A stretch of 63,875 nucleotides of DNA, counting the filler, from Octopus bimaculoides (Eukaryota): the NCBI RefSeq assembly GCF_001194135.2. It is 6 parts of 6 records of this genome, joined end to end, with 100 filler letters (N's around TTAATTAATTAA, not from the genome) between each part and the next. Parts side by side here need not be neighbours in the genome. Positions count along the whole stretch, not along the records: positions 1 to 29,394 come from NC_068986.1; 5 more parts are not named here. One strand, written 5' to 3'. Positions 169 to 27,103 of this stretch are shown in pieces. How positions within the stretch are numbered: the first letter of the stretch is position 1; every line of letters begins with the position of its first letter. Position numbers and translations under genes: made by a program. Below the pieces are notes generated by a model that was given only the letters and a program-made list of their open reading frames with translations, was not told where the DNA came from and made no database searches.

Positions 169-2179
169 ACATTTCTGTAACAGAATTATAGAATGCAACA
201 GTGAAGTAAAGGTAAGTGCTTCCCACCCAACAACTTATAATCACAGTTAAACATCTATATTGGAAAAACCAACTATGGCTTATCTAATACTGTTAATATT
301 AGTGGGAAAGGCATGAATAACACACCCCGCATTTATCATCCTTGAAATATATAGGAGTATTGTGACTAGGCAAAAAGGAAATATTTTAACAATTATGATA
401 ATTCAATAATTAGGTGTTGAGTTTTTAAATGATAATTGCTTGTATAAAAATTGTCGATATTAAATATTGTATAATGCTCTCAATGTGTAAAAATAATTAG
501 CAGTTAGAACTAGATTCTTTGATCGTTACGTCATTTCATACAATTTTATAAAGAAAAGGTGCAGTCATAGATGTGTGGCTAAGAAGTTCTCATTACAGCT
601 GTTTGGTTTTGGGTTCGATCCTACTGTATGGCATTTTGAACTAGTCTTTTACTGGAAACTGTGTGGAAGCCCCTTGAGAACCATATAATGAAGTTTTCTT
701 CACAAACATGTGAGTTTGGGTTCAGGTCAATTGCACAGCACCTTAGGCAAGAGTCTTCTGTGATAATGCCAAGGCTGACCAAAGCCTTGCAAGTAGACTT
801 GGTAGAGGGAAACTGAAAGAAGCCTACTGTGCATATGCACGTGTGTGTGTTTAAAGTGTCTACAAAAACCACTCACTGTGAGCAGTGTTGTTGTTACTTC
901 TGTCAACAAATCCTGCCTGCTTGCTTTACACCATCAAAAACATGTGAAGTAAAAAAGCCTTTACTGGTCAGCCCAGGGCTATTGTACAGAGTGTCCACAA
1001 AGTCTGGGTACATGGGGGATTAACACATACTTTCAGAAATTATTATTTTTTATATTTAATTATTTATGTTATGATTTTATTTACTCCATGTACCCAGATT
1101 TTGTGTACACTCTGTAGAAGAGACATGCCCAAAGTGCCATACAGTAGGATCAATCCCCAAACCATGTGGTTGCAAAGTGAGCTTCGTACCACACACCTAA
1201 GTCTGCACCTGTATTGGTGCACATCAGAGATCAAAACAAATAAGCACTCCACCAGAGTTGCACAGGCAATTTTTTACCCCATTACTTTCATAATTTAAAT
1301 GTTGTGACCTGACAGTTTGCCTCACTGGTGACCCATAACCAATAACATTACTGTTCAGAAAATGGGATATAAAAAAAAAAATAATAATTAAAATAAATTA
1401 ACTTATCCAAAACAGTTGTTGATAAGTGTTGACCAAAGCCTATCAGAAATTAAAACTTTGATAAATTAAAGTCTGCTGGTTTATCAGCCGAGTATTTGAA
1501 TAGCGAAAATAATTGACAAGTCACAGTGGGAAAGACTCACTAACAATTGAATTATATTCAAGTAAACTCAGATAATCAGGTTGAAGTGGAGATTCTCCCT
1601 GCCCCGTTTTTATCTTTGTTATCAATATTTATGTTGACAGAATTGACTGCTGATTGATTTATTGATCTGTTTAGTCATACACTGTAAACAAACAACCATG
1701 GAAACAACAAATATGAAGTCATCTAGGTTGTTTGTTTGTTTGGTTTTTTTTTTTTGGTTTTTTTTTTTTTTTTAAGAAATAAAATTTACATATTAATGAA
1801 ATTTATATTTTATACAGTGGGGCATATTTTCATTGAAACATAATTAACTATATGTTATTGCCCGAAGATAACATAAATACAATTAACTTTTAATCGGGAA
1901 TAATGCAATCAGATGCAAAATATCAGAAGCCAATGGCTCCACTGGAACAACGTAGAAAGTGAGAAGTGTGATGAGTATTGTAGTTGTGAAGTCCCAGGTC
2001 AGACCTGATTGAGGAAACCTATGAACAAAAGCCTTCCAGTTATGGCCATCCCATATATATCTATATTTTTTCTTGGCTACATTACCCAATGTTTATTCCA
2101 TTCTTTAATTCCAGCCCACTTCTGGTTAAGCAGACTTATGATTAAAGACATTCTAGTTGTAGCCATTCCATATTTACAG

Positions 2180-2354
2180 ACAGTGGCTGTGTGGTAAGTA
2201 GCTTGCTTACTAACCACATGGTTCCGGGTTCAGTCCCACTGCATGGAACCTTGGGTAAGTGTCTTCCACTATAGCCTCGGGCTGACCAAAGTCTTGTGAG
2301 TGGATTTGGTAGACGGAAACTGAAAGAAGCCCGTCATATATATCTATATGTATG

Positions 2355-2428
<74 letters not shown>

Positions 2429-2648
2429 TATATATGTATGTATGTGTATATATTTGTGTGTCTGTGTTTGTTCCCCCAACAACGCTTGACAACCAATGCC
2501 GGTGTATTTAGCGGTTCGGCAAAAGAGACTGATAGAATAAGTACTAGGCTTCCAAAGAAAAAGTCCTGGGGTCGATTTGCTCAACTAAAGGCGGTGCTCC
2601 AGCATGGCCGCAGTCAAATGACTGAAACAAGTAAAAGAATAAAGAGAG
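2180..2648 (+). mobile_element. tRNA-derived CORE-like SINE, composite with internal (AT)n (type A)
   Basis: A-box-like gtggctgtgtggtaag; B-box-like ggttcagtcc; CORE-like accttggg(c/t)aagtgtctt; microsatellite; then a conserved right arm ending gactgaaacaagtaaaaga. Confidence 0.8.
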
Positions 2649-3916
2649 AGCTTATTTCAGACTGCATTATCCAATACATCCTTCCTTTTCTTTATAAAGA
2701 CAGCAGGATTTCACTATTATTTCTAGCATGTTGAGTGGCCACATAGAGAATCTATCATTCATTTGAAATGCATGATGGTTTTAAAAGAAAACTAGCAGAG
2801 ATAGTTAGCTCAGACTGGCAAAAAGGATTGCAATAATAATAAAATGGAGACAGCAACCTGGTTGGGATCTATTTTAGAGATCATTGCCTAATTATCTTTA
2901 CATTCTTAAAAGGAAAACAAAGACTTTTATTCTATTGCATATACTGAATTTTTCTACAGCCCTGTAAGCTTCCACAATACCAGTGCTTTCTATATATCAA
3001 AGCATGAATTTCATCTATGCAAGTAGACAATCAAGTTTCAACAAAGGTAAAATGCATTTGTCATCTTATGAGTCACTGGAGTTCAATATATGCCTTGAAC
3101 ACAAGTCTATGAAGAGATTTTATCTCAGATAATTCCTCAGCTTCATGCCTTCTAAAGGTGTATTACATTTAGTTACCATACAGATGGCAGTTTTAATTTT
3201 TTTTTTTATGTTGTAAGAAAGAGATTTTCAAGAACAGGACAGTTTTTCTAAAAGTGAAAGTGACAAAAGCTTGTGTGTACAACTTGGGTGAAACAAAAGC
3301 CACACAGAGTACAAGTATTTTTATTCTGAAATATCAGCTTTGTAACCACACTGCCATGCCTGTCCACATAACTTATTATTAATCAGGTATAATTATGGCT
3401 ATGTAAAATACCACAAAAGAAAACTTTGCTTTTTATTGTTGTTTAGCCTTGACTGAATTTGATAAGCAAATTGAAGTCATCTTTATTACTAATAATACAT
3501 CTTGAACTACATTATTGCATCCGCCCCTTTTTAAAGATGACACTGTCTGGTTTGAGGGGAATGTGATTGCTTGTTGACTCATTTAAAGCTAAGAATTCAG
3601 AAAAATAAAACAATAGTACTTCAGTGTCAATAAGTTCATGAGATTGGAAATAAGAGCATTAGTTCTTTGTTTTTTTCCCCATTTGCACTTCTCCAAGTGA
3701 TGCAACATTTTTTACACTGAAAACCCTTGTTGACAGTTACCTTCTTCTTCAGTGGAAGAGACGGCTTTAGTTGTGTAATACATTTAGTAATTCAGACATC
3801 TGTAAAATGAATTACATTAATTATTCAGCTCAGTCAAGCAAGACGGTTAATTTAGCATGTAACGATTAACACAATGTTGTCTGAGTTCCGTTTCAGGGAT
3901 CTTAGCAATAAAATGA

Positions 3917-3986
<70 letters not shown>

Positions 3987-4382
3987 CCATTGGTTGATAA
4001 CAAAGGAATATGAATTATTATTCATCAACATCATGCATAGGTTAGATGGAGTTCATTTGAGGCAGATTTTCTACAGCTGGATGTTCTTCCTGTCGCCAAC
4101 CCTTATCTGCCTCCAAACAAGGTAATATTTCCTCATGGCCAGACATGTTCTCACACAACATTGGAAATGAATAACACAGCTTGTATAGCAGTGACACACA
4201 TTAACAACTATCATGTGATGTCTAGACAAGGAGACAAGCACTCACACAGACTCATACAAACATGCCATTCAGTGGGACTGAACCCAAGACTATGTGGTTT
4301 GGAAGCAAACTTCTTACCACACAGCCACACTTGAAAATTCAGAATTTTCAAAGTACTTCATTTGCAGTTTATAATTAGTCTA

Positions 4383-4902
4383 ATCTCTTAGAGAGATTCC
4401 CAACATCACTATTTTTATGGCCTTCTCCACTGTAAGCAGATGTTGTTGCTCTCTCTTTGTCAAGGCCCAAGTCTCACATGTATATAGCATTGCAGACAAG
4501 ACTGTGCTGTTGAAGTGATTGGCGTGAACTGCCTTGTCTAGGTTCGCCTTCAGCATATCCTTCACAGAGTTAAATGCTCTCCATCTTCACACCCGGAACA
4601 AGGAGATCAGGGATAGAACTGGAGAGAAGGATGTCATCACAGAACACCACCACACAAAGCTATGATGGACCGGTCATGCTGCAAGGTTCAAAGACAACCA
4701 GTGGACCATGCAGCTGTCAAGTGCTACCTAAGCGAATGGAAGAGATCAATAGGAAGACCACCAATGAGGTGGGAAGATGATTTAAGAATGGAACAATGTA
4801 TGGAACAATGTGGAGGAGAATGGCAAAAGTATGAGGAGAACGGAGTGAATGCTGTGGCCAGCAGAGCCGACTTGGCACCAGACAGCTTGGCTGATCCAGA
4901 TG
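4383..4902 (+). mobile_element. 5'-truncated RTE-clade LINE with 5' inversion and 12-bp TSD
   Basis: Minus strand 4586->4383 reads WRAFNSVKDMLK...LYTCETW...MLGISLRD. Plus strand from 4588 reads HTRNKEIRDRTG...WTGHAARF...GRPPMRWEDDL. Flanked by AATTAGTCTAAT at 4373-4384 and 4903-4914. Confidence 0.85.
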
Positions 4903-5568
4903 AATTAGTCTAATAATAATAAGAACATATATGTATGTATATGTATTGATGTCTTTTCTTTCACAATGTTTTCTAATATATAAACTTTCTACATATATCT
5001 AGAATGCCTTGGCTGGACCTGACAAAATACCAAAGTGTTCTGGTTATTTATTCTTTTGAATCCCAACATCATTTTAGTGTTCACCTTTCTATACTAGTAG
5101 AAGTCAGATAGCACTTATTTTAATAAGGCTCAAAGCCCTCTATTTTCCAAACCATCACCTGTTTCAAAGCAGGGTAATATTTCCTCCTTTTTCATGGAAA
5201 ACTGGTATCAAATACTTGCTTATATGACAATGACACTCATTTACAACTATCACATGATGTTAAGTCAAGGAAACACACACACACGCACAAATTATCTACT
5301 TTCAGTTTCTGTGTGTCAAATTTGCTGACAAGGCTTTGGTTGGCCCACCCGAGGTACCACACAGTGGGACTGAACCTAAAACCAAATCGTTGGAAAGTCA
5401 ACTTTTTAATCACACAGCCATGCCTGCTCATATAATTAGTAATTCATAATTTTTGCTTGGTGGTCCCCAAGCATGGTTTTGAAAATAGTTTAACAGATGA
5501 TTTGGGGATTTTGCTCTTGTTGAACAATTCAGGTTTTGAAGACTGCTAAAGCCATTAGTGGTTCTCTC

Positions 5569-5622
<54 letters not shown>

Positions 5623-6084
5623 CCATCTAAGGAACGTGTGTCAGAATTTATGTTCAAAAACAAGTGTAAGGTGAGCTTGTGTTGAATATAAGTTATTACA
5701 AAAACTTTTCTGCTTATCTTAATCCATATAGAGGAAATGAGATGTTTTAATAGTAATAAGGTTCTAAGTTTACACAAATCAGCATTTACACACACACACC
5801 ATACAAACATTATTCATTTGTTAAATTTCCTTTTTTCCCTGCTAGCATGGGTTGGAGAGACAAGGATGTATTTGAGAGCGGGACACACACTACAACAAAC
5901 ACATGCACACGAAAGGCTTCTTTTAGTTTGTTTCCATCTACCAAATCCACTCACAAGGCTTTGGTCAACCCAAGGTTAAAATACAAGACACTAGCCCAGG
6001 GTGCCAAGCAGTGGGACTTAACATGCGATTGGAAAGCAAACTTCTTACCACACAACCACGCCTCTGCCTATAATACATGTCATC

Positions 6085-6610
6085 CTCATCATCATTTAGC
6101 ATTTGCTTTCCATGCTGACATGGGTTAGATGGTTTGACTGGGAGTGATAAGCCAGAGAGCTGCACCATGTTCCAGCCAGATTTGGCATGCTTTCTACAGC
6201 TGGATGCCCTTCTTAACACCAACCACTCCACAGAGTGTACTGGGTCCTTTTCATGTGCCACCAGCACAGGTGCCAGTTATGTGACACTGGCATTGGCCAC
6301 AAGTATGATTTCACTTGGCTTGACAAATCTTCTCAAGCACAGCATATTGCCAAAGGTCTCAAGTCACTTATCACCTCTGTGAGGCCCAGCATTTGAAGAT
6401 CATGCTTCCCCACCTTGTCCCAGGTCTTCTTGCATCTACCTCTTCCACAGGTTCCCTCAACAGAGATCAACACTTCTTTACACAGCTGTCCTTGTCCATA
6501 CGCATCACATGACCATACCAGCACAGTCGTCTCTCTTGCACACCACATTTGATGCCTGTTATGCCCAACTTTTCTCTCAAGATCCTTACATTCTGTCATA
6601 CATGCACACT
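6085..6610 (-). mobile_element. RTE LINE 3' end (end of ORF, 3'UTR and GAT tail)
   Basis: SVEGTCGRGRCKKTWD...DLQMLGLTE (RTE C-terminus) contiguous with a 3'UTR ending in (GAT)n. Confidence 0.8.
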
Positions 6611-7519
6611 GACATTGCACATCCAGCAAAGCATACTAGCTTCATATATTTTAATCATACTAGCTTCATATATGTTAATATTAGTGCAAGTTGAAAACTG
6701 GTACATTCAAATAGTAATACCATGTAATATTTACAAACAAATTTTCTTCACATGTCAATATAGACTTTAGATTTTTTTTAAGAATGAAAGTGTTTCTCAG
6801 TCAGATTGACCTGAGACTTAACAACAACAACAACAACAGTAGCACTATAGCTGATATATATTACAACACTACTGAAATGGCTTATAGTTTGAAATGGGTT
6901 TTCCAAATATCAGTTATGGCAGCNNNNNNNNNNNNNNNNNNNNNNNNNNNNNNNNNNNNNNNNNNNNNNNNNNNNNNNNNNNNNNNNNNNNNNNNNNNNN
7001 NNNNNNNNNNNNNNNNNNNNNNNNNNNNNNNNNNNNNNNNNNNNNNNNNNNNNNNNNNNNNNNNNNNNNNNNNNNNNNNNNNNNNNNNNNNNNNNNNNNN
7101 NNNNNNNNNNNNNNNNNNNNNNNNNNNNNNNNNNNNNNNNNNNNNNNNNNNNNNNNNNNNNNNNNNNNNNNNNNNNNNNNNNNNNNNNNNNNNNNNNNNN
7201 NNNNNNNNNNNNNNNNNNNNNNNNNNNNNNNNNNNNNNNNNNNNNNNNNNNNNNNNNNNNNNNNNNNNNNNNNNNNNNNNNNNNNNNNNNNNNNNNNNNN
7301 NNNNNNNNNAAAATTGAGCCACTTCCTAAACCACCCAATTTACAGGAAATAAATTATTATTACAAAGAAATTTATTGAAAAATTAAATCAATAAAATTAT
7401 GAAGCGACTATAAAACTAACTTTCTGATCCATTATTATGTAGGCTTAAACAGTAAAAAAAAAATAATAATAAGAGCATTCAGAGAGTAAAGAAAAAAAAA
7501 AAGTGGAAAAATAATCCAG

Positions 7520-18796: not shown

Positions 18797-19027
18797 ACTC
18801 TTTTACTTGTTTGAGTCATTTGAATATGGCCATGCTGGAGCACCGCCTTTAGTTGAGCAAATCGACCCCAGGACTTATTCTTTTGTAAGCCTAGTACTAA
18901 TTCTATCGGTCTTTTTTGCCGAACCGCTAAGTTACGGGGACGTAAACACACCAGCATCAGTTGTCAAGCAATGTTGGGGGGACAAACACAGACACACAAA
19001 CATATACACACATACATACATACATAC

Positions 19028-19086
<59 letters not shown>

Positions 19087-19245
19087 CGAAGGGCTTCTTT
19101 CAGTTTCTGTCTACCAAATCCACTCACAAGGCTTTGGTCTGCTCGAGGATACAATAGAAGACACTTGCCCAAGGTACCACGCAGTGGGACTGAACCTGAA
19201 ACCATGTGGTTGGTAAGCAAGCCACTTACCACACAGCCACTCCTA
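18797..19245 (-). mobile_element. Type A composite SINE
   Basis: Near full-length reverse complement of 2180-2648. Confidence 0.8.
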
Positions 19246-20340
19246 CACCGTGTCCACTAAGGTTCAACAAGTCTTCCACAGGAAGGCATCTCACCACTTG
19301 TTGCACTTGTTTGACTTTTATGGGGTTCAGCCTCTTGAAACTAGCTTTGATCACTTCTCAAATTTTCCTAAGACTTTCTTTTCCACAAGTTCTTTCTTCA
19401 AGTGCTATGTAATCCAAGATTCTTGAATCCCTTGGCAGTTCTCTACTCACCTGCCATTCTCAATACATATCACATGCCTACTCTAGTACAGTCTTTTCTC
19501 TTTTACACTACAACTGTACATTCTTGTACACTTTCTTCTAGTCTTTCTCTCAACTCCTTTCATTCAGTGTTCATGCACACAAATATTCCTTTCTACTATA
19601 GGCACAAGGCCTGAAACTTTGGAGGAGGGGGACAGTCAATTACATTGACCCCAGTGGTCAAATGATACTTATCTCATTGACCTTCAAAAGATGAAAACAA
19701 AATTGACCTAGGCAGAATTTGAACGCAAACTGTAAAGACAGATGAAGTGGTGCTAATCATTTTTGTCCGGTATGCTGATTCAGCCAGCTCCCCTTTGCAT
19801 ATCTATTAGAACATGCTTACTTCATCTTTTTCAAGCCTTTGCTCATCTTCTGCATAAAATACCTATTTTTTTCTATTATGCATGATTGCACTATGTTTCT
19901 CCCTCACACACACACACACACACACAATTATACAATTTACCCTTTACTTAAATCAGACATGGGGAAAAAATTTATGGGATCGTCCAGGCTAGAATTGCTG
20001 TATTGCAAATGGGTTACAATTATCCAACATGAAAACATATTTAAACTGAATAATAATGGAACAAAAATTCCAACTATTTATATAGAGTGATCTGAAACTA
20101 TCAATCAAATTATCACTTTTTAACATCCTCTTTTCCATGCTTGCATGGGCTGAATAAAATTTGTTGAGGTGGATTTTCTACAGTTGGATGCCCTTCCTGT
20201 TACCAACATTCACCTGTTTACAAGCAAGGTGATATTTCCGATATTTCCTCAATGATCTGATCTTGGAAGACTGGGAATGAAGGACATTGCTTGTATGGCA
20301 GTGACATTCTCATCATACAATGTTAGGATAAGAACACAGC

Positions 20341-21730: not shown

Positions 21731-22074
21731 TGTATATATATTAATGAACAATTATATACACATGCTGAAAAAAAAATTAATTAAGTGTATATATTTCCTA
21801 TTTTTCTTTGTTTTTGTATTGCAAGATATTTTTATGTGAATTTGTTGATGTGTCATAACATTAATAATAACAACAGATGCACAGGTTCAATTCCACTTCT
21901 TTATTGCCAGTCAAATGATTAGATTGGTTAAATATCTAACCAACTAACTAATCAACTGCTTGTTTAATGTGCTGGTTAAATAATAATTCAGTCATTTAAC
22001 CAGCAGATTAAACAAACATTGGAGAGGAGAAGTTGTAAAGTCATTGAGGTTACAAACAGTAATGAAAACTTAAG

Positions 22075-22242
22075 GTGCAGGAGTGGCTGTGTGCTAAGTA
22101 GCTTGCTTACCAACCACATGGTTCCGGGTTCAGTCCCACTGCATGGCATCTTGGGCAAGTGTCTTCTGCTATGGCCTTGGGTCGACCAAAGCTTTGTGAG
22201 TGGATTTGGTAGGCAGAAACTGAAAGAAGCCCGTTGTATATA

Positions 22243-26472: not shown

Positions 26473-27103
26473 ATGACTAAAGACATCATTGACTAAAGGC
26501 ATCATTGACTAAAGGCATCAATGACTATAGACACCATTGACTATAGACACCAATGACTATAGACACCAATGACTATAGACACCAATGACTATAGACACCA
26601 ATGACTATAGACACCAATGACTATAGACACCAATGACTATAGACACCAATGACTATAGACACCAATGACTNNNNNNNNNNNNNNNNNNNNNNNNNNNNNN
26701 NNNNNNNNNNNNNNNNNNNNNNNNNNNNNNNNNNNNNNNNNNNNNNNNNNNNNNNNNNNNNNNNNNNNNNNNNNNNNNNNNNNNNNNNNNNNNNNNNNNN
26801 NNNNNNNNNNNNNNNNNNNNNNNNNNNNNNNNNNNNNNNNNNNNNNNNNNNNNNNNNNNNNNNNNNNNNNNNNNNNNNNNNNNNNNNNNNNNNNNNNNNN
26901 NNNNNNNNNNNNNNNNNNNNNNNNNNNNNNNNNNNNNNNNNNNNNNNNNNNNNNNNNNNNNNNNNNNNNNTCAATGACTAAAGACATCAATGACTAAAGA
27001 CATCAATGACTAAAGACATCAATGACTAAAGACATCAATGACTAAAGACATCAATGACTAAAGACATCAATGACTAAAGACATCAATGACTAAAGACATC
27101 AAT
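26473..27103. repeat. 16-bp minisatellite (CAATGACTA[T/A]AGACA[C/T])n spanning a gap
   Basis: Contiguous units with no spacers on both sides of the N run. Confidence 0.95.

What the first reader, a model, noticed from the sequence alone, without database searches (positions are those of the whole stretch)
4373..4914. RTE-clade LINE insertion with a textbook twin-priming 5' inversion
Seen: a 12-bp TSD (AATTAGTCTAAT) brackets an inverted segment (4586->4383, ending ...ISLRD) and a forward segment starting at 4588 (HTRNKEI...). The forward segment begins exactly where the inverted segment stops in the protein (SLRD|HxRNxEI), with apparently no loss or duplication. The left TSD overlaps the inverted segment by 2 nt (AT), the microhomology expected of an internal primer. 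Established: this geometry is the twin-priming model described for mammalian L1. Inference: an invertebrate RTE enzyme can also second-strand prime internally, which to my knowledge is rarely reported outside mammalian L1.
Basis: partly seen in the sequence, partly recalled or inferred. Interest (0 to 1): 0.78.

Follow-up and report, generated by a model that had tools for sequence, protein, structure and literature searches.

The report
RTE-type LINE insert with inverted 5' part
A 517-bp fragment of an RTE-like jumping gene sits between perfect 12-bp target duplications with its upstream 202 bp flipped, joined exactly as the "twin priming" model of human L1 predicts. It is a clean single case of a known mechanism in a LINE clade where I found no report of it.

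Summary
AATTAGTCTAAT occurs only twice in the piece, at 4373-4384 and 4903-4914. These copies bracket a LINE 3' fragment made of two parts. Part one is 4385-4586 on the minus strand (...MLGISLRD). Part two is 4588-4902 on the plus strand (HTRNKEIR... to the ORF stop at 4892-4894).

A profile of 24 long homologues was run on the unjoined six-frame translation. It places the minus part at nodes 711-778 and the plus part from node 779, so they are exactly adjacent. 81 of 104 homologues imply zero residues lost or duplicated. The closest relatives (55% aa identity) read ...GAT CAC A.C CG... straight across the join.

The last two bases of the left duplication (AT) double as the end of the Asp codon. 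That is the microhomology expected at an internal primer.

Homologues are single-ORF endonuclease plus reverse-transcriptase elements of about 975 aa on 3.2-3.5 kb contigs, which is RTE-like. No phylogeny was done.

Twin priming is the best explanation (about 0.8). Caveats:
- There is only one copy.
- The host is unknown.
- No family consensus is available.
- Only 8 nt of 3' UTR are present.
- The scaffold is a draft.

None of 92 related loci showed the same geometry. Interest is moderate to low.

The parts
4373..4384 (.). Left copy of the 12-bp target-site duplication AATTAGTCTAAT. Its last two bases (AT, 4383-4384) also complete the Asp codon GAT of the inverted part, giving a 2-nt microhomology at the proposed internal priming site.
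   Evidence: The relative L001 has GAT at this codon.
4385..4586 (-). Inverted 5' part. It holds 202 nt of the LINE ORF read on the minus strand (RWRAFNS...MLGISLRD) and matches profile nodes 711-778. The 68 codons are uninterrupted.
   Evidence: DNA identity to L001/L002 is 65%.
4587..4587 (.). A single T at the inversion junction with three possible origins. It may be the T of codon GAT copied into the forward cDNA, the complement of the base just upstream of the inverted part (A in L001, T in L002), or an untemplated base.
4588..4902 (+). Forward 3' part. It holds 315 nt of the same ORF from HTRNKEIR (profile node 779) to the ORF stop TGA at 4892-4894, plus 8 nt of 3' UTR (TCCAGATG). Defects are in-frame TGA at 4663-4665 and 4832-4834, a frameshift near 4722, a second frameshift between 4787 and 4802, and a 12-bp tandem duplication at 4788-4811. 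There is no poly(A).
   Evidence: DNA identity to L001/L002 is 60-62%.
4903..4914 (.). Right copy of the 12-bp target-site duplication AATTAGTCTAAT, followed by the target flank AATAATAAGAAC...

Best explanation
A single retrotransposition event of an RTE-like LINE was resolved by twin priming.

Inferred sequence of steps:
1. The element's endonuclease nicked the bottom strand at 5'-CTAATT^ATAAAC-3' (between 4372 and 4373 of the empty site).
2. That 3' end primed cDNA 1 on the element RNA, giving the forward part 4588-4902.
3. The top strand was cut 12 nt downstream.
4. The freed 3' overhang ...GTCTAAT-3' annealed inside the same RNA at ...GAG-AU-CACAC... The terminal AT paired, and 5 of the last 7 primer bases are complementary.
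5. This overhang primed cDNA 2, which ran 202-203 nt towards the RNA 5' end. It now reads as antisense directly after the left TSD.
6. cDNA 1 stopped at the base next to the annealed primer, which is why nothing is lost or duplicated.
7. The two cDNA ends were joined at 4586/4588 with at most 1 nt of overlap, and gap filling produced the 12-bp TSD.

Shown here: the TSD, the two orientations, their exact adjacency in the protein, and the AT overlap. Inferred: the order of events and which enzyme did the priming. Only a reverse transcriptase can extend a DNA primer on RNA. With no poly(A) and an RTE-typical TSD, the element's own enzyme is the likely one.
For: - The exact 12-bp TSD brackets the homology edges.
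- Unjoined profile hits sit at nodes 711-778 on the minus strand and from node 779 on the plus strand.
- 81 of 104 homologues imply a 0-residue gap at the join.
- A single HMMER stretch crosses the join in nearly all of the 150 best of 1817 hits, and the alignment reads LGISLRDH.xN.
- The DNA alignment to L001/L002 is gapless, with GAT CAC A.C CG conserved across the join.
- Both parts are similarly diverged from the same relatives: 65% and 60-62% DNA identity, 37% and 40% mean aa identity.
- The parts share no sequence, and no inverted repeat lies at the inversion borders.
- Feature-by-feature agreement with L1 twin priming: 95% of 5'-inverted L1 have 5'-junction microhomology, about 70% of them 2-5 bp, and their TSDs are long (PMC2912911). 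46% have the two cDNA ends within 20 bp, and segment medians are 253 and 292 bp (PMC12016303).
- PMC4245944 argues that a 10-20-nt overhang is needed for second priming. RTE TSDs peak at 10-12 bp.
Against: - It is a single copy, and no family consensus could be obtained. Breakpoints are therefore fixed to a codon, and to about -2/+1 nt only through relatives at 55% aa identity.
- The piece is a gapped draft scaffold, and no reads were available.
- Only 8 nt follow the stop codon, whereas relatives L001/L002 carry at least 112 nt of 3' UTR with a conserved distal 85 nt. The 3' end may therefore not be the canonical one.
- None of 92 related loci from public contigs, including about 33 5'-truncated copies with upstream flank, shows the same geometry.
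- The forward part carries 2 stops and 2 frameshifts while the inverted part carries none. This difference is not significant (Poisson P about 0.07).
Confidence: 0.8

Rival explanations
1. Assembly artefact: the 202-bp block was placed in the wrong orientation by a short-read assembler.
For: The piece is a draft scaffold with eight runs of N, seven of them inside the piece, and many SINE and microsatellite repeats. No reads were available to check it.
Against: No repeat or k-mer overlap exists at 4385 or 4587 that could mislead an assembler. The nearest N run is at 6924. A misorientation would not be expected to end exactly at a TSD edge with 2-nt microhomology, nor leave the two parts codon-adjacent.
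Confidence: 0.05
2. Two events: either two independent LINE fragments landed head to head, or a normal 517-bp 5'-truncated insert later had its first 202 bp inverted by breakage and rejoining.
For: Head-to-head and nested RTE-like copies do occur in related loci (L052, L053, L081, L087).
Against: The inverted block lacks the element's 3' end, which a target-primed insert should carry. Neither part has its own TSD, and one TSD encloses both. The chance that two independent breakpoints fall on adjacent codons of an 877-node ORF is about 0.3% or less. A later inversion would have to start exactly at the insert's 5' edge, and no inverted repeats flank the block.
Confidence: 0.05
3. The geometry is twin priming, but the enzyme came from another LINE. 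An L1-type or other family would have mobilised the RTE RNA in trans, or both primers annealed internally by microhomology without recognising the RTE 3' end.
For: Only 8 nt of 3' UTR are present, against at least 112 nt in the closest relatives. That is what a 3'-truncated, internally primed insert would look like. The nick site AATT^AT is AT-rich and not diagnostic. At least one other LINE family is present in the window, at 6344-6667 on the minus strand.
Against: There is no poly(A) or A-rich tail at 4902. L1-driven copies have poly(A) in over 90% of cases (PMC12016303). The 12-bp TSD is the RTE modal length (PMC4245944, PMC6007223, PMC1291365). RTE-clade 3' UTRs are known to be unusually short (PMC1291365), so 8 nt may be genuine.
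Confidence: 0.08

Closest known systems
5'-inverted (twin-primed) L1 insertions of human, chimpanzee and mouse (model of Ostertag and Kazazian 2001; surveys in PMC2912911 and PMC12016303)
   Same: One TSD encloses an antisense 5' block and a sense 3' block that are neighbours in the element. There is microhomology between the 5' TSD end and the internal priming site. The TSD is at least 10 bp. Block sizes of a few hundred bp match the medians of 253 and 292 bp in somatic L1.
   Different: The element is RTE-like and not L1. It has no poly(A), a 12-bp rather than 13-15-bp TSD, and no ORF1. In L1 the structure makes up 18-31% of insertions. Here there is one case, and 0 of about 33 truncated relatives examined.
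Zebrafish Nimb-2_DR (I group): one 5'-inverted insert in chicken DT40 cells (PMC4245944)
   Same: It is a non-L1 LINE with a TSD of about 12 bp that gave a 5' inversion. This fits that paper's idea that a long 3' overhang is what permits second priming.
   Different: It belongs to a different clade, with an ORF1/ORF2 structure. It arose in a cell-culture assay in a foreign host and is not a genomic copy.
RTE-clade elements RTE-1 (C. elegans), SR2/SR3 (Schistosoma) and BovB (PMC1291365, PMC6007223)
   Same: Relatives of the window copy are 3.2-3.5 kb with a single ORF of about 975 aa carrying APE endonuclease and RT. TSDs are 10-12 bp and start with A. There is no poly(A) and the 3' UTR is short.
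   Different: I found no report of 5' inversion for these families. The AT-rich 3' repeat tail typical of the clade is not visible in the window copy.
U6 snRNA-RTE chimeras in Anolis (RTEX-2; PMC4476161)
   Same: They show that RTE-clade reverse transcriptases carry out non-canonical template use during target-primed reverse transcription.
   Different: That is template switching at the cDNA end and gives sense-sense chimeras. The paper reports twin-priming-type chimeras only for L1.

Membership tests
Twin-priming-type 5'-inverted LINE insertion | One target-site duplication of element-typical length encloses the whole insert | tested here: met
   An exact 12/12 repeat lies at 4373-4384 and 4903-4914, with only two copies in the piece. 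The RTE modal TSD is 10-12 bp (PMC4245944, PMC6007223).
Twin-priming-type 5'-inverted LINE insertion | An antisense 5' block abuts the 5' TSD and a sense 3' block abuts the 3' TSD | tested here: met
   The minus-strand hit at 4374-4586 and the plus-strand hits at 4588-4829 are the only strong matches to the profile in the window.
Twin-priming-type 5'-inverted LINE insertion | The two blocks are neighbours in the element, with a small gap or overlap, and are not duplicates of each other | tested here: met
   Profile nodes 778 and 779 are adjacent. 81 of 104 homologues give a 0-residue gap. The DNA alignment to L001/L002 is gapless. The blocks share no sequence.
Twin-priming-type 5'-inverted LINE insertion | Microhomology between the 3' end of the 5' TSD and the internal priming site | tested here: met
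   AT (4383-4384) is both the TSD end and the end of the Asp codon. Asp is conserved there, and the codon is GAT in L001. 5 of the last 7 primer bases are complementary to the RNA (read from the sequence).
Twin-priming-type 5'-inverted LINE insertion | Microhomology at the inversion junction | tested here: inconclusive
   T4587 could belong to either cDNA or be untemplated. The family consensus is needed.
Twin-priming-type 5'-inverted LINE insertion | The sense block ends at the element's genuine 3' terminus | tested here: inconclusive
   The ORF stop is at the same place as in relatives, but only 8 nt of UTR follow, against at least 112 nt in L001/L002.
Twin-priming-type 5'-inverted LINE insertion | An empty site exists, showing a single event, and the junctions are confirmed in reads | not testable with these tools
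[quoted passage not shown] | A compact element of about 3.2-3.9 kb with a single ORF of about 920-1070 aa carrying APE endonuclease then RT, and no separate ORF1 | tested here: met
   This was tested on relatives, not on the fragment itself. Proteins of 974-1005 aa carry Exo_endo_phos and RVT_1 and sit on contigs of 3182-3470 bp. L001 is a 3252-bp contig with one 974-aa ORF at 215-3139. Reference values are in PMC1291365.
[quoted passage not shown] | TSD of 10-12 bp, often starting with A in animals, and no poly(A) tail | tested here: met
   The 12-bp TSD starts with AA, and no A run is present at 4902. See PMC6007223 and PMC1291365.
[quoted passage not shown] | An unusually short 3' UTR ending in AT-rich tri- to pentamer repeats | tested here: inconclusive
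   The UTR is 8 nt with no repeat inside the insert. An (AAT)3 run lies just outside the right TSD in the target flank.
[quoted passage not shown] | The RT and EN domains fall inside the RTE clade in a phylogeny with reference elements | not tested
   No reference sequences of other LINE clades were at hand. Source names of the homologues are uninformative: nematode, moth, weevil and turtle 'hypothetical' or 'reverse transcriptase' proteins.
L1 clade | A poly(A) tail at the 3' junction | tested here: not met
   The sequence ...CCAGATG is followed directly by the TSD.

The most novel reading that the evidence does not exclude
Second-strand (twin) priming may be a general ability of LINE reverse transcriptases that make long (at least 10 bp) staggered cuts, and not a peculiarity of L1 in mammalian cells. 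In this host, RTE copies with 5' inversions would then be recurrent. A sharper version follows if the 8-nt 3' UTR means 3' truncation: both target ends primed at internal RNA sites by a few bases of microhomology. That would mean a 'stringent' RTE enzyme can start without recognising its 3' tail.
Probability: 0.25. Interest if true: 0.55.

Novelty: new member of a known kind. Interest (0 to 1): 0.38.

Why it matters
Cell-culture work concluded that 5' inversions depend on both the LINE species and the host. They were seen almost only with L1 in human cells, and the authors proposed that a long target overhang is what allows the second priming (PMC4245944). RTE elements make 10-12-bp duplications, so that model predicts they could do it too.

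This insert is a clean natural example that fits the prediction. It turns the prediction into a countable question: what fraction of RTE copies in this genome are 5'-inverted, compared with short-TSD clades such as L2 and CR1 in the same host?

On its own it is one anecdote of a known mechanism. It has no bearing on host gene function.

Tried and rejected
1. Word-indexed protein search with the joined 130-aa query found nothing, so no close relatives are in that collection.
2. Pfam gave no hit on the fragment itself, because the region lies C-terminal of RVT_1.
3. No second copy of the family exists in the window by blastn or tblastn, so no in-window consensus can be built.
4. An exact look-up of the 61-aa window ORF is not on record.
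5. The predicted uninverted junction CTCTAAGAGATCACACCC has 0 hits in viral and prokaryote-genome contigs. A viral-contig protein scan found no relatives.
6. I tested 'same family' by correlating per-segment similarity across 104 homologues. Spearman was about 0, which is uninformative because all hits are 35-50% identical and were selected on total score. Equal DNA divergence from L001/L002 was used instead.
7. I surveyed 80 metagenome loci and 12 loci from contaminated prokaryote MAGs for the same geometry and found 0 candidates. Both-strand cases are head-to-head or nested copies. The same criteria do detect the window case.
8. I asked whether the right flank could be an RTE 3' UTR, which would make the right 12-mer internal to the element. 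The local score against the L001 UTR is only in the top 2% of window background and is inconsistent between relatives and strands, so I rejected it as chance.
9. The antisense reading of the forward part gives VVFCDDILL, which resembles the RT FADD motif. With E = 4.4 and the wrong distance, it is chance.
10. Rfam and tRNA scans of the piece found nothing.
11. I guessed the host might be an octopus and searched the supplements of an octopus RTE paper. Nothing matched, so the host remains unknown.
12. The key primary papers (Ostertag and Kazazian 2001; Ichiyanagi and Okada 2008; Ichiyanagi et al. 2007) are not held. Whether the 2008 survey of vertebrate RTE copies recorded 5' inversions could not be checked.

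Full report
**What is there.** The piece is a 34% G+C draft scaffold with several runs of N and many SINE-like and microsatellite repeats.

The 12-mer AATTAGTCTAAT occurs exactly twice, at 4373-4384 and 4903-4914, and neither copy can be extended by a base. Between the copies lie 518 bases. All of them except T4587 are LINE coding sequence, in two orientations.

- Minus strand, 4586 down to 4385: an uninterrupted 68-codon frame, RWRAFNS...ETWALTKREQQHLLTVEKAIKIVMLGISLRD. Its last codon, GAT, uses C4385 plus T4384 and A4383 of the left repeat.
- Plus strand, from 4588: HTRNKEIRDRTGEKDVITEHHHTKL*WTGHAARFKDNQWT. After a frameshift near 4722 it reads CYLSEWKRSIGRPPMRWEDDLR. After a second shift it reads GTMWRRMAKV*GERSECCGQQSRLGTRQLG, with the ORF stop TGA at 4892-4894.
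- Only 8 nt (TCCAGATG) separate that stop from the right repeat. There is no poly(A).

**Is it more than chance?** A 12-mer match at a given pair of positions has probability about 1.5e-7 at this composition. The piece holds 58 maximal exact direct repeats of at least 12 bp lying 100-2000 bp apart, and most belong to SINE copies, tandem arrays or low-complexity runs. For such a pair to sit within a few bases of both independently defined homology edges is about a 1e-5 event.

**Identity of the element.**
- The word-indexed protein search found nothing. The exhaustive HMMER search with the joined 130-aa query found 1817 proteins at E <= 1e-3. Nearly all of the best 150 match in a single stretch spanning the join.
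- The long hits are proteins of 839-1005 aa. The 974-1005-aa ones (P0011, P0014, P0029) carry Exo_endo_phos/Exo_endo_phos_2 at the N-terminus and RVT_1 in the middle, and the window fragment aligns to their last 160 residues or so.
- They sit on contigs of 3.2-3.5 kb, or in nematode, moth, weevil and turtle genomes.
- The closest relative found, L001 (55% aa identity), is a 3252-bp contig with one 974-aa ORF at 215-3139.
- This compact single-ORF layout, the 12-bp TSD starting with A, and the absence of poly(A) are the published hallmarks of the RTE clade (PMC1291365, PMC6007223, PMC4245944).
- I did not do a phylogeny, so clade membership is probable and not proven.

**Are the two blocks neighbours in the element?** Joining them by hand could bias the test, so I repeated it unjoined.
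- An 877-node profile of 24 homologues of at least 600 aa, searched against the six-frame translation of 4100-5100, hits the minus strand at nodes 711-778 (ending ...lgiklrD) and the plus strand from node 779 (H of HTRNKEIR). These are the only strong hits in the whole window.
- Separate blastp of each block against the hits gives an implied gap of 0 residues in 81 of 104 homologues and +4 in 16. One of the latter, P0015, is seen in the alignment to carry its own 4-residue insertion there.
- At DNA level, inverted block + AT + forward block aligns without a gap to L001 and L002. The sequence GAT CAC A.C CG is conserved across the join. Identity is 65% on the inverted side and 60-62% on the forward side.
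- The blocks share no sequence with each other, and no inverted repeat marks the borders.
- The structure is therefore TSD - antisense (y..x) - sense (z..end) - TSD with z = y+1. The uncertainty is about -2 to +1 nt, because AT is shared with the TSD and T4587 is unassignable.

**Mechanism.** This is the geometry of twin priming as described for L1 (PMC2912911, PMC12016303).
- The bottom-strand nick at CTAATT^ATAAAC primes cDNA 1 on the RNA.
- The top strand is cut 12 nt downstream.
- Its 3' overhang ...GTCTAAT-3' anneals to ...GAG-AU-CACAC... inside the same RNA and primes cDNA 2. The terminal AT pairs, and 5 of the last 7 bases are complementary, as read from the sequence.
- cDNA 1 stops at the base next to the primer, and the two cDNAs are joined.

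An antisense block fused to the top-strand 3' end requires copying of sense RNA, so a reverse transcriptase must have extended that end. That step is inference, as is the order of events.

The details fit the L1 statistics:
- 95% of 5'-inverted L1 show 5'-junction microhomology, about 70% of them 2-5 bp, and they have long TSDs (PMC2912911).
- 46% have the two cDNA ends within 20 bp.
- Block medians are 253 and 292 bp (PMC12016303), against 315 and 202 bp here.

**Rivals.**
- Misassembly cannot be excluded without reads. Nothing at 4385 or 4587 could mislead an assembler, and an artefact would not be expected to respect the TSD edge and codon adjacency.
- Two independent fragments are unlikely for three reasons. 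The inverted block lacks a 3' end, neither block has its own TSD, and adjacent breakpoints would be a coincidence of about 0.3% or less.
- A later inversion would have to start exactly at the insert's 5' edge.
- Mobilisation in trans by an L1-type enzyme is disfavoured by the missing poly(A).

**An unresolved point.** The 3' UTR is only 8 nt here, against at least 112 nt in L001/L002, whose distal 85 nt are nearly identical to each other. Either this family has a minimal UTR or first-strand priming was also internal. The right flank does not convincingly match the relatives' UTR.

**How common is it?** I screened 80 metagenome loci and 12 loci from prokaryote MAGs that evidently contain eukaryotic DNA, using the same profile and explicit geometric criteria. 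There were no further cases, including about 33 5'-truncated copies with at least 300 bp of upstream flank. The sample is small, heterogeneous and biased towards consensus-like contigs. It suggests only that the structure is not as frequent as in human L1, where it makes up 18-31% of insertions.

**Literature.**
- The listed titles and abstracts of the 106 open papers that use 'twin priming' are overwhelmingly about mammalian L1; 40 of them were listed.
- 11 papers hold 'twin priming' together with 'RTE'. In the two I first checked, the term sits in the reference list (confirmed for PMC5389967). A third, PMC4476161, discusses both in its text and reports twin-priming-type chimeras for L1 only.
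- One paper holds 'twin priming' together with 'BovB'.
- PMC4245944 found 5' inversions only with L1 in human cells, plus one Nimb-2_DR insert, and linked them to long overhangs.
- PMC4476161 shows RTE enzymes template-switch to U6.
- The primary papers of 2001, 2007 and 2008 are not held, so a prior report for vertebrate RTE cannot be ruled out.

**Verdict.** It is a new member of a known kind: a twin-priming-type 5' inversion in an RTE-like LINE. It is documented by one copy in a draft assembly of an unidentified host. Interest is moderate to low. Its main value is as a prompt for a genome-wide count.

Noticed in passing
window 4098-4327 (-), 5150-5420 (-), also about 6034-6054 and ORF-level look-alikes at 2210-2584, 18957-19260, 22019-22150: A family of SINE-like repeats, about 77-78% identical between copies. 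On the minus strand it starts with a tRNA-like head (GGCTGTGTGGTAAGAAG...GGGTTCAGTCCCACTG). ARAGORN and Rfam do not call it. The LINE insert lies 57 bp outside the nearest copy.
   Followed up: partly
window 6344-6667 (-): A second, different LINE 3'-end fragment (...RGRGRCKKTWDKVGKHDL...) matches profile nodes 756-862 weakly (E 3e-6). It lies about 260 bp from the N run at 6924-7309.
   Followed up: partly
window 4895-4902 versus L001 3141-3252 and L002 1776-1893: The window copy has only 8 nt of 3' UTR. Its closest relatives have at least 112 nt, and the distal 85 nt or so are almost identical between them, perhaps a 3' recognition element. The window copy may be 3'-truncated.
   Followed up: partly
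window 4788-4811: A perfect 12-bp tandem duplication (ATGGAACAATGT x2) sits inside the forward LINE block. It adds MEQC to the reading frame.
   Followed up: no
window 3935-3985 and 5569-5619: (GT)n(TA)n and (TA)n(CA)n microsatellites form 51-nt, 100% complementary inverted arms 1.58 kb apart, enclosing the whole locus. This could make the orientation of the 1.6-kb segment ambiguous in assembly. It cannot create the internal inversion.
   Followed up: no
window 26473-27100: A 16-bp minisatellite (ATGACTAAAGACATCA and a variant) lies on both sides of the N run 26671-26970.
   Followed up: no
L083, L084, L086, L087, L089-L092 (CBDHHR01 contigs) and L081, L082, L085: Records labelled as bacterial MAGs (Metamycoplasmataceae, Breoghania, Fibrobacter, Bacteroidales) carry RTE-like LINE copies. 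These are almost certainly eukaryotic host DNA binned by mistake. L087 shows an RTE nested in an RTE, and L081 shows two copies tail to tail.
   Followed up: partly
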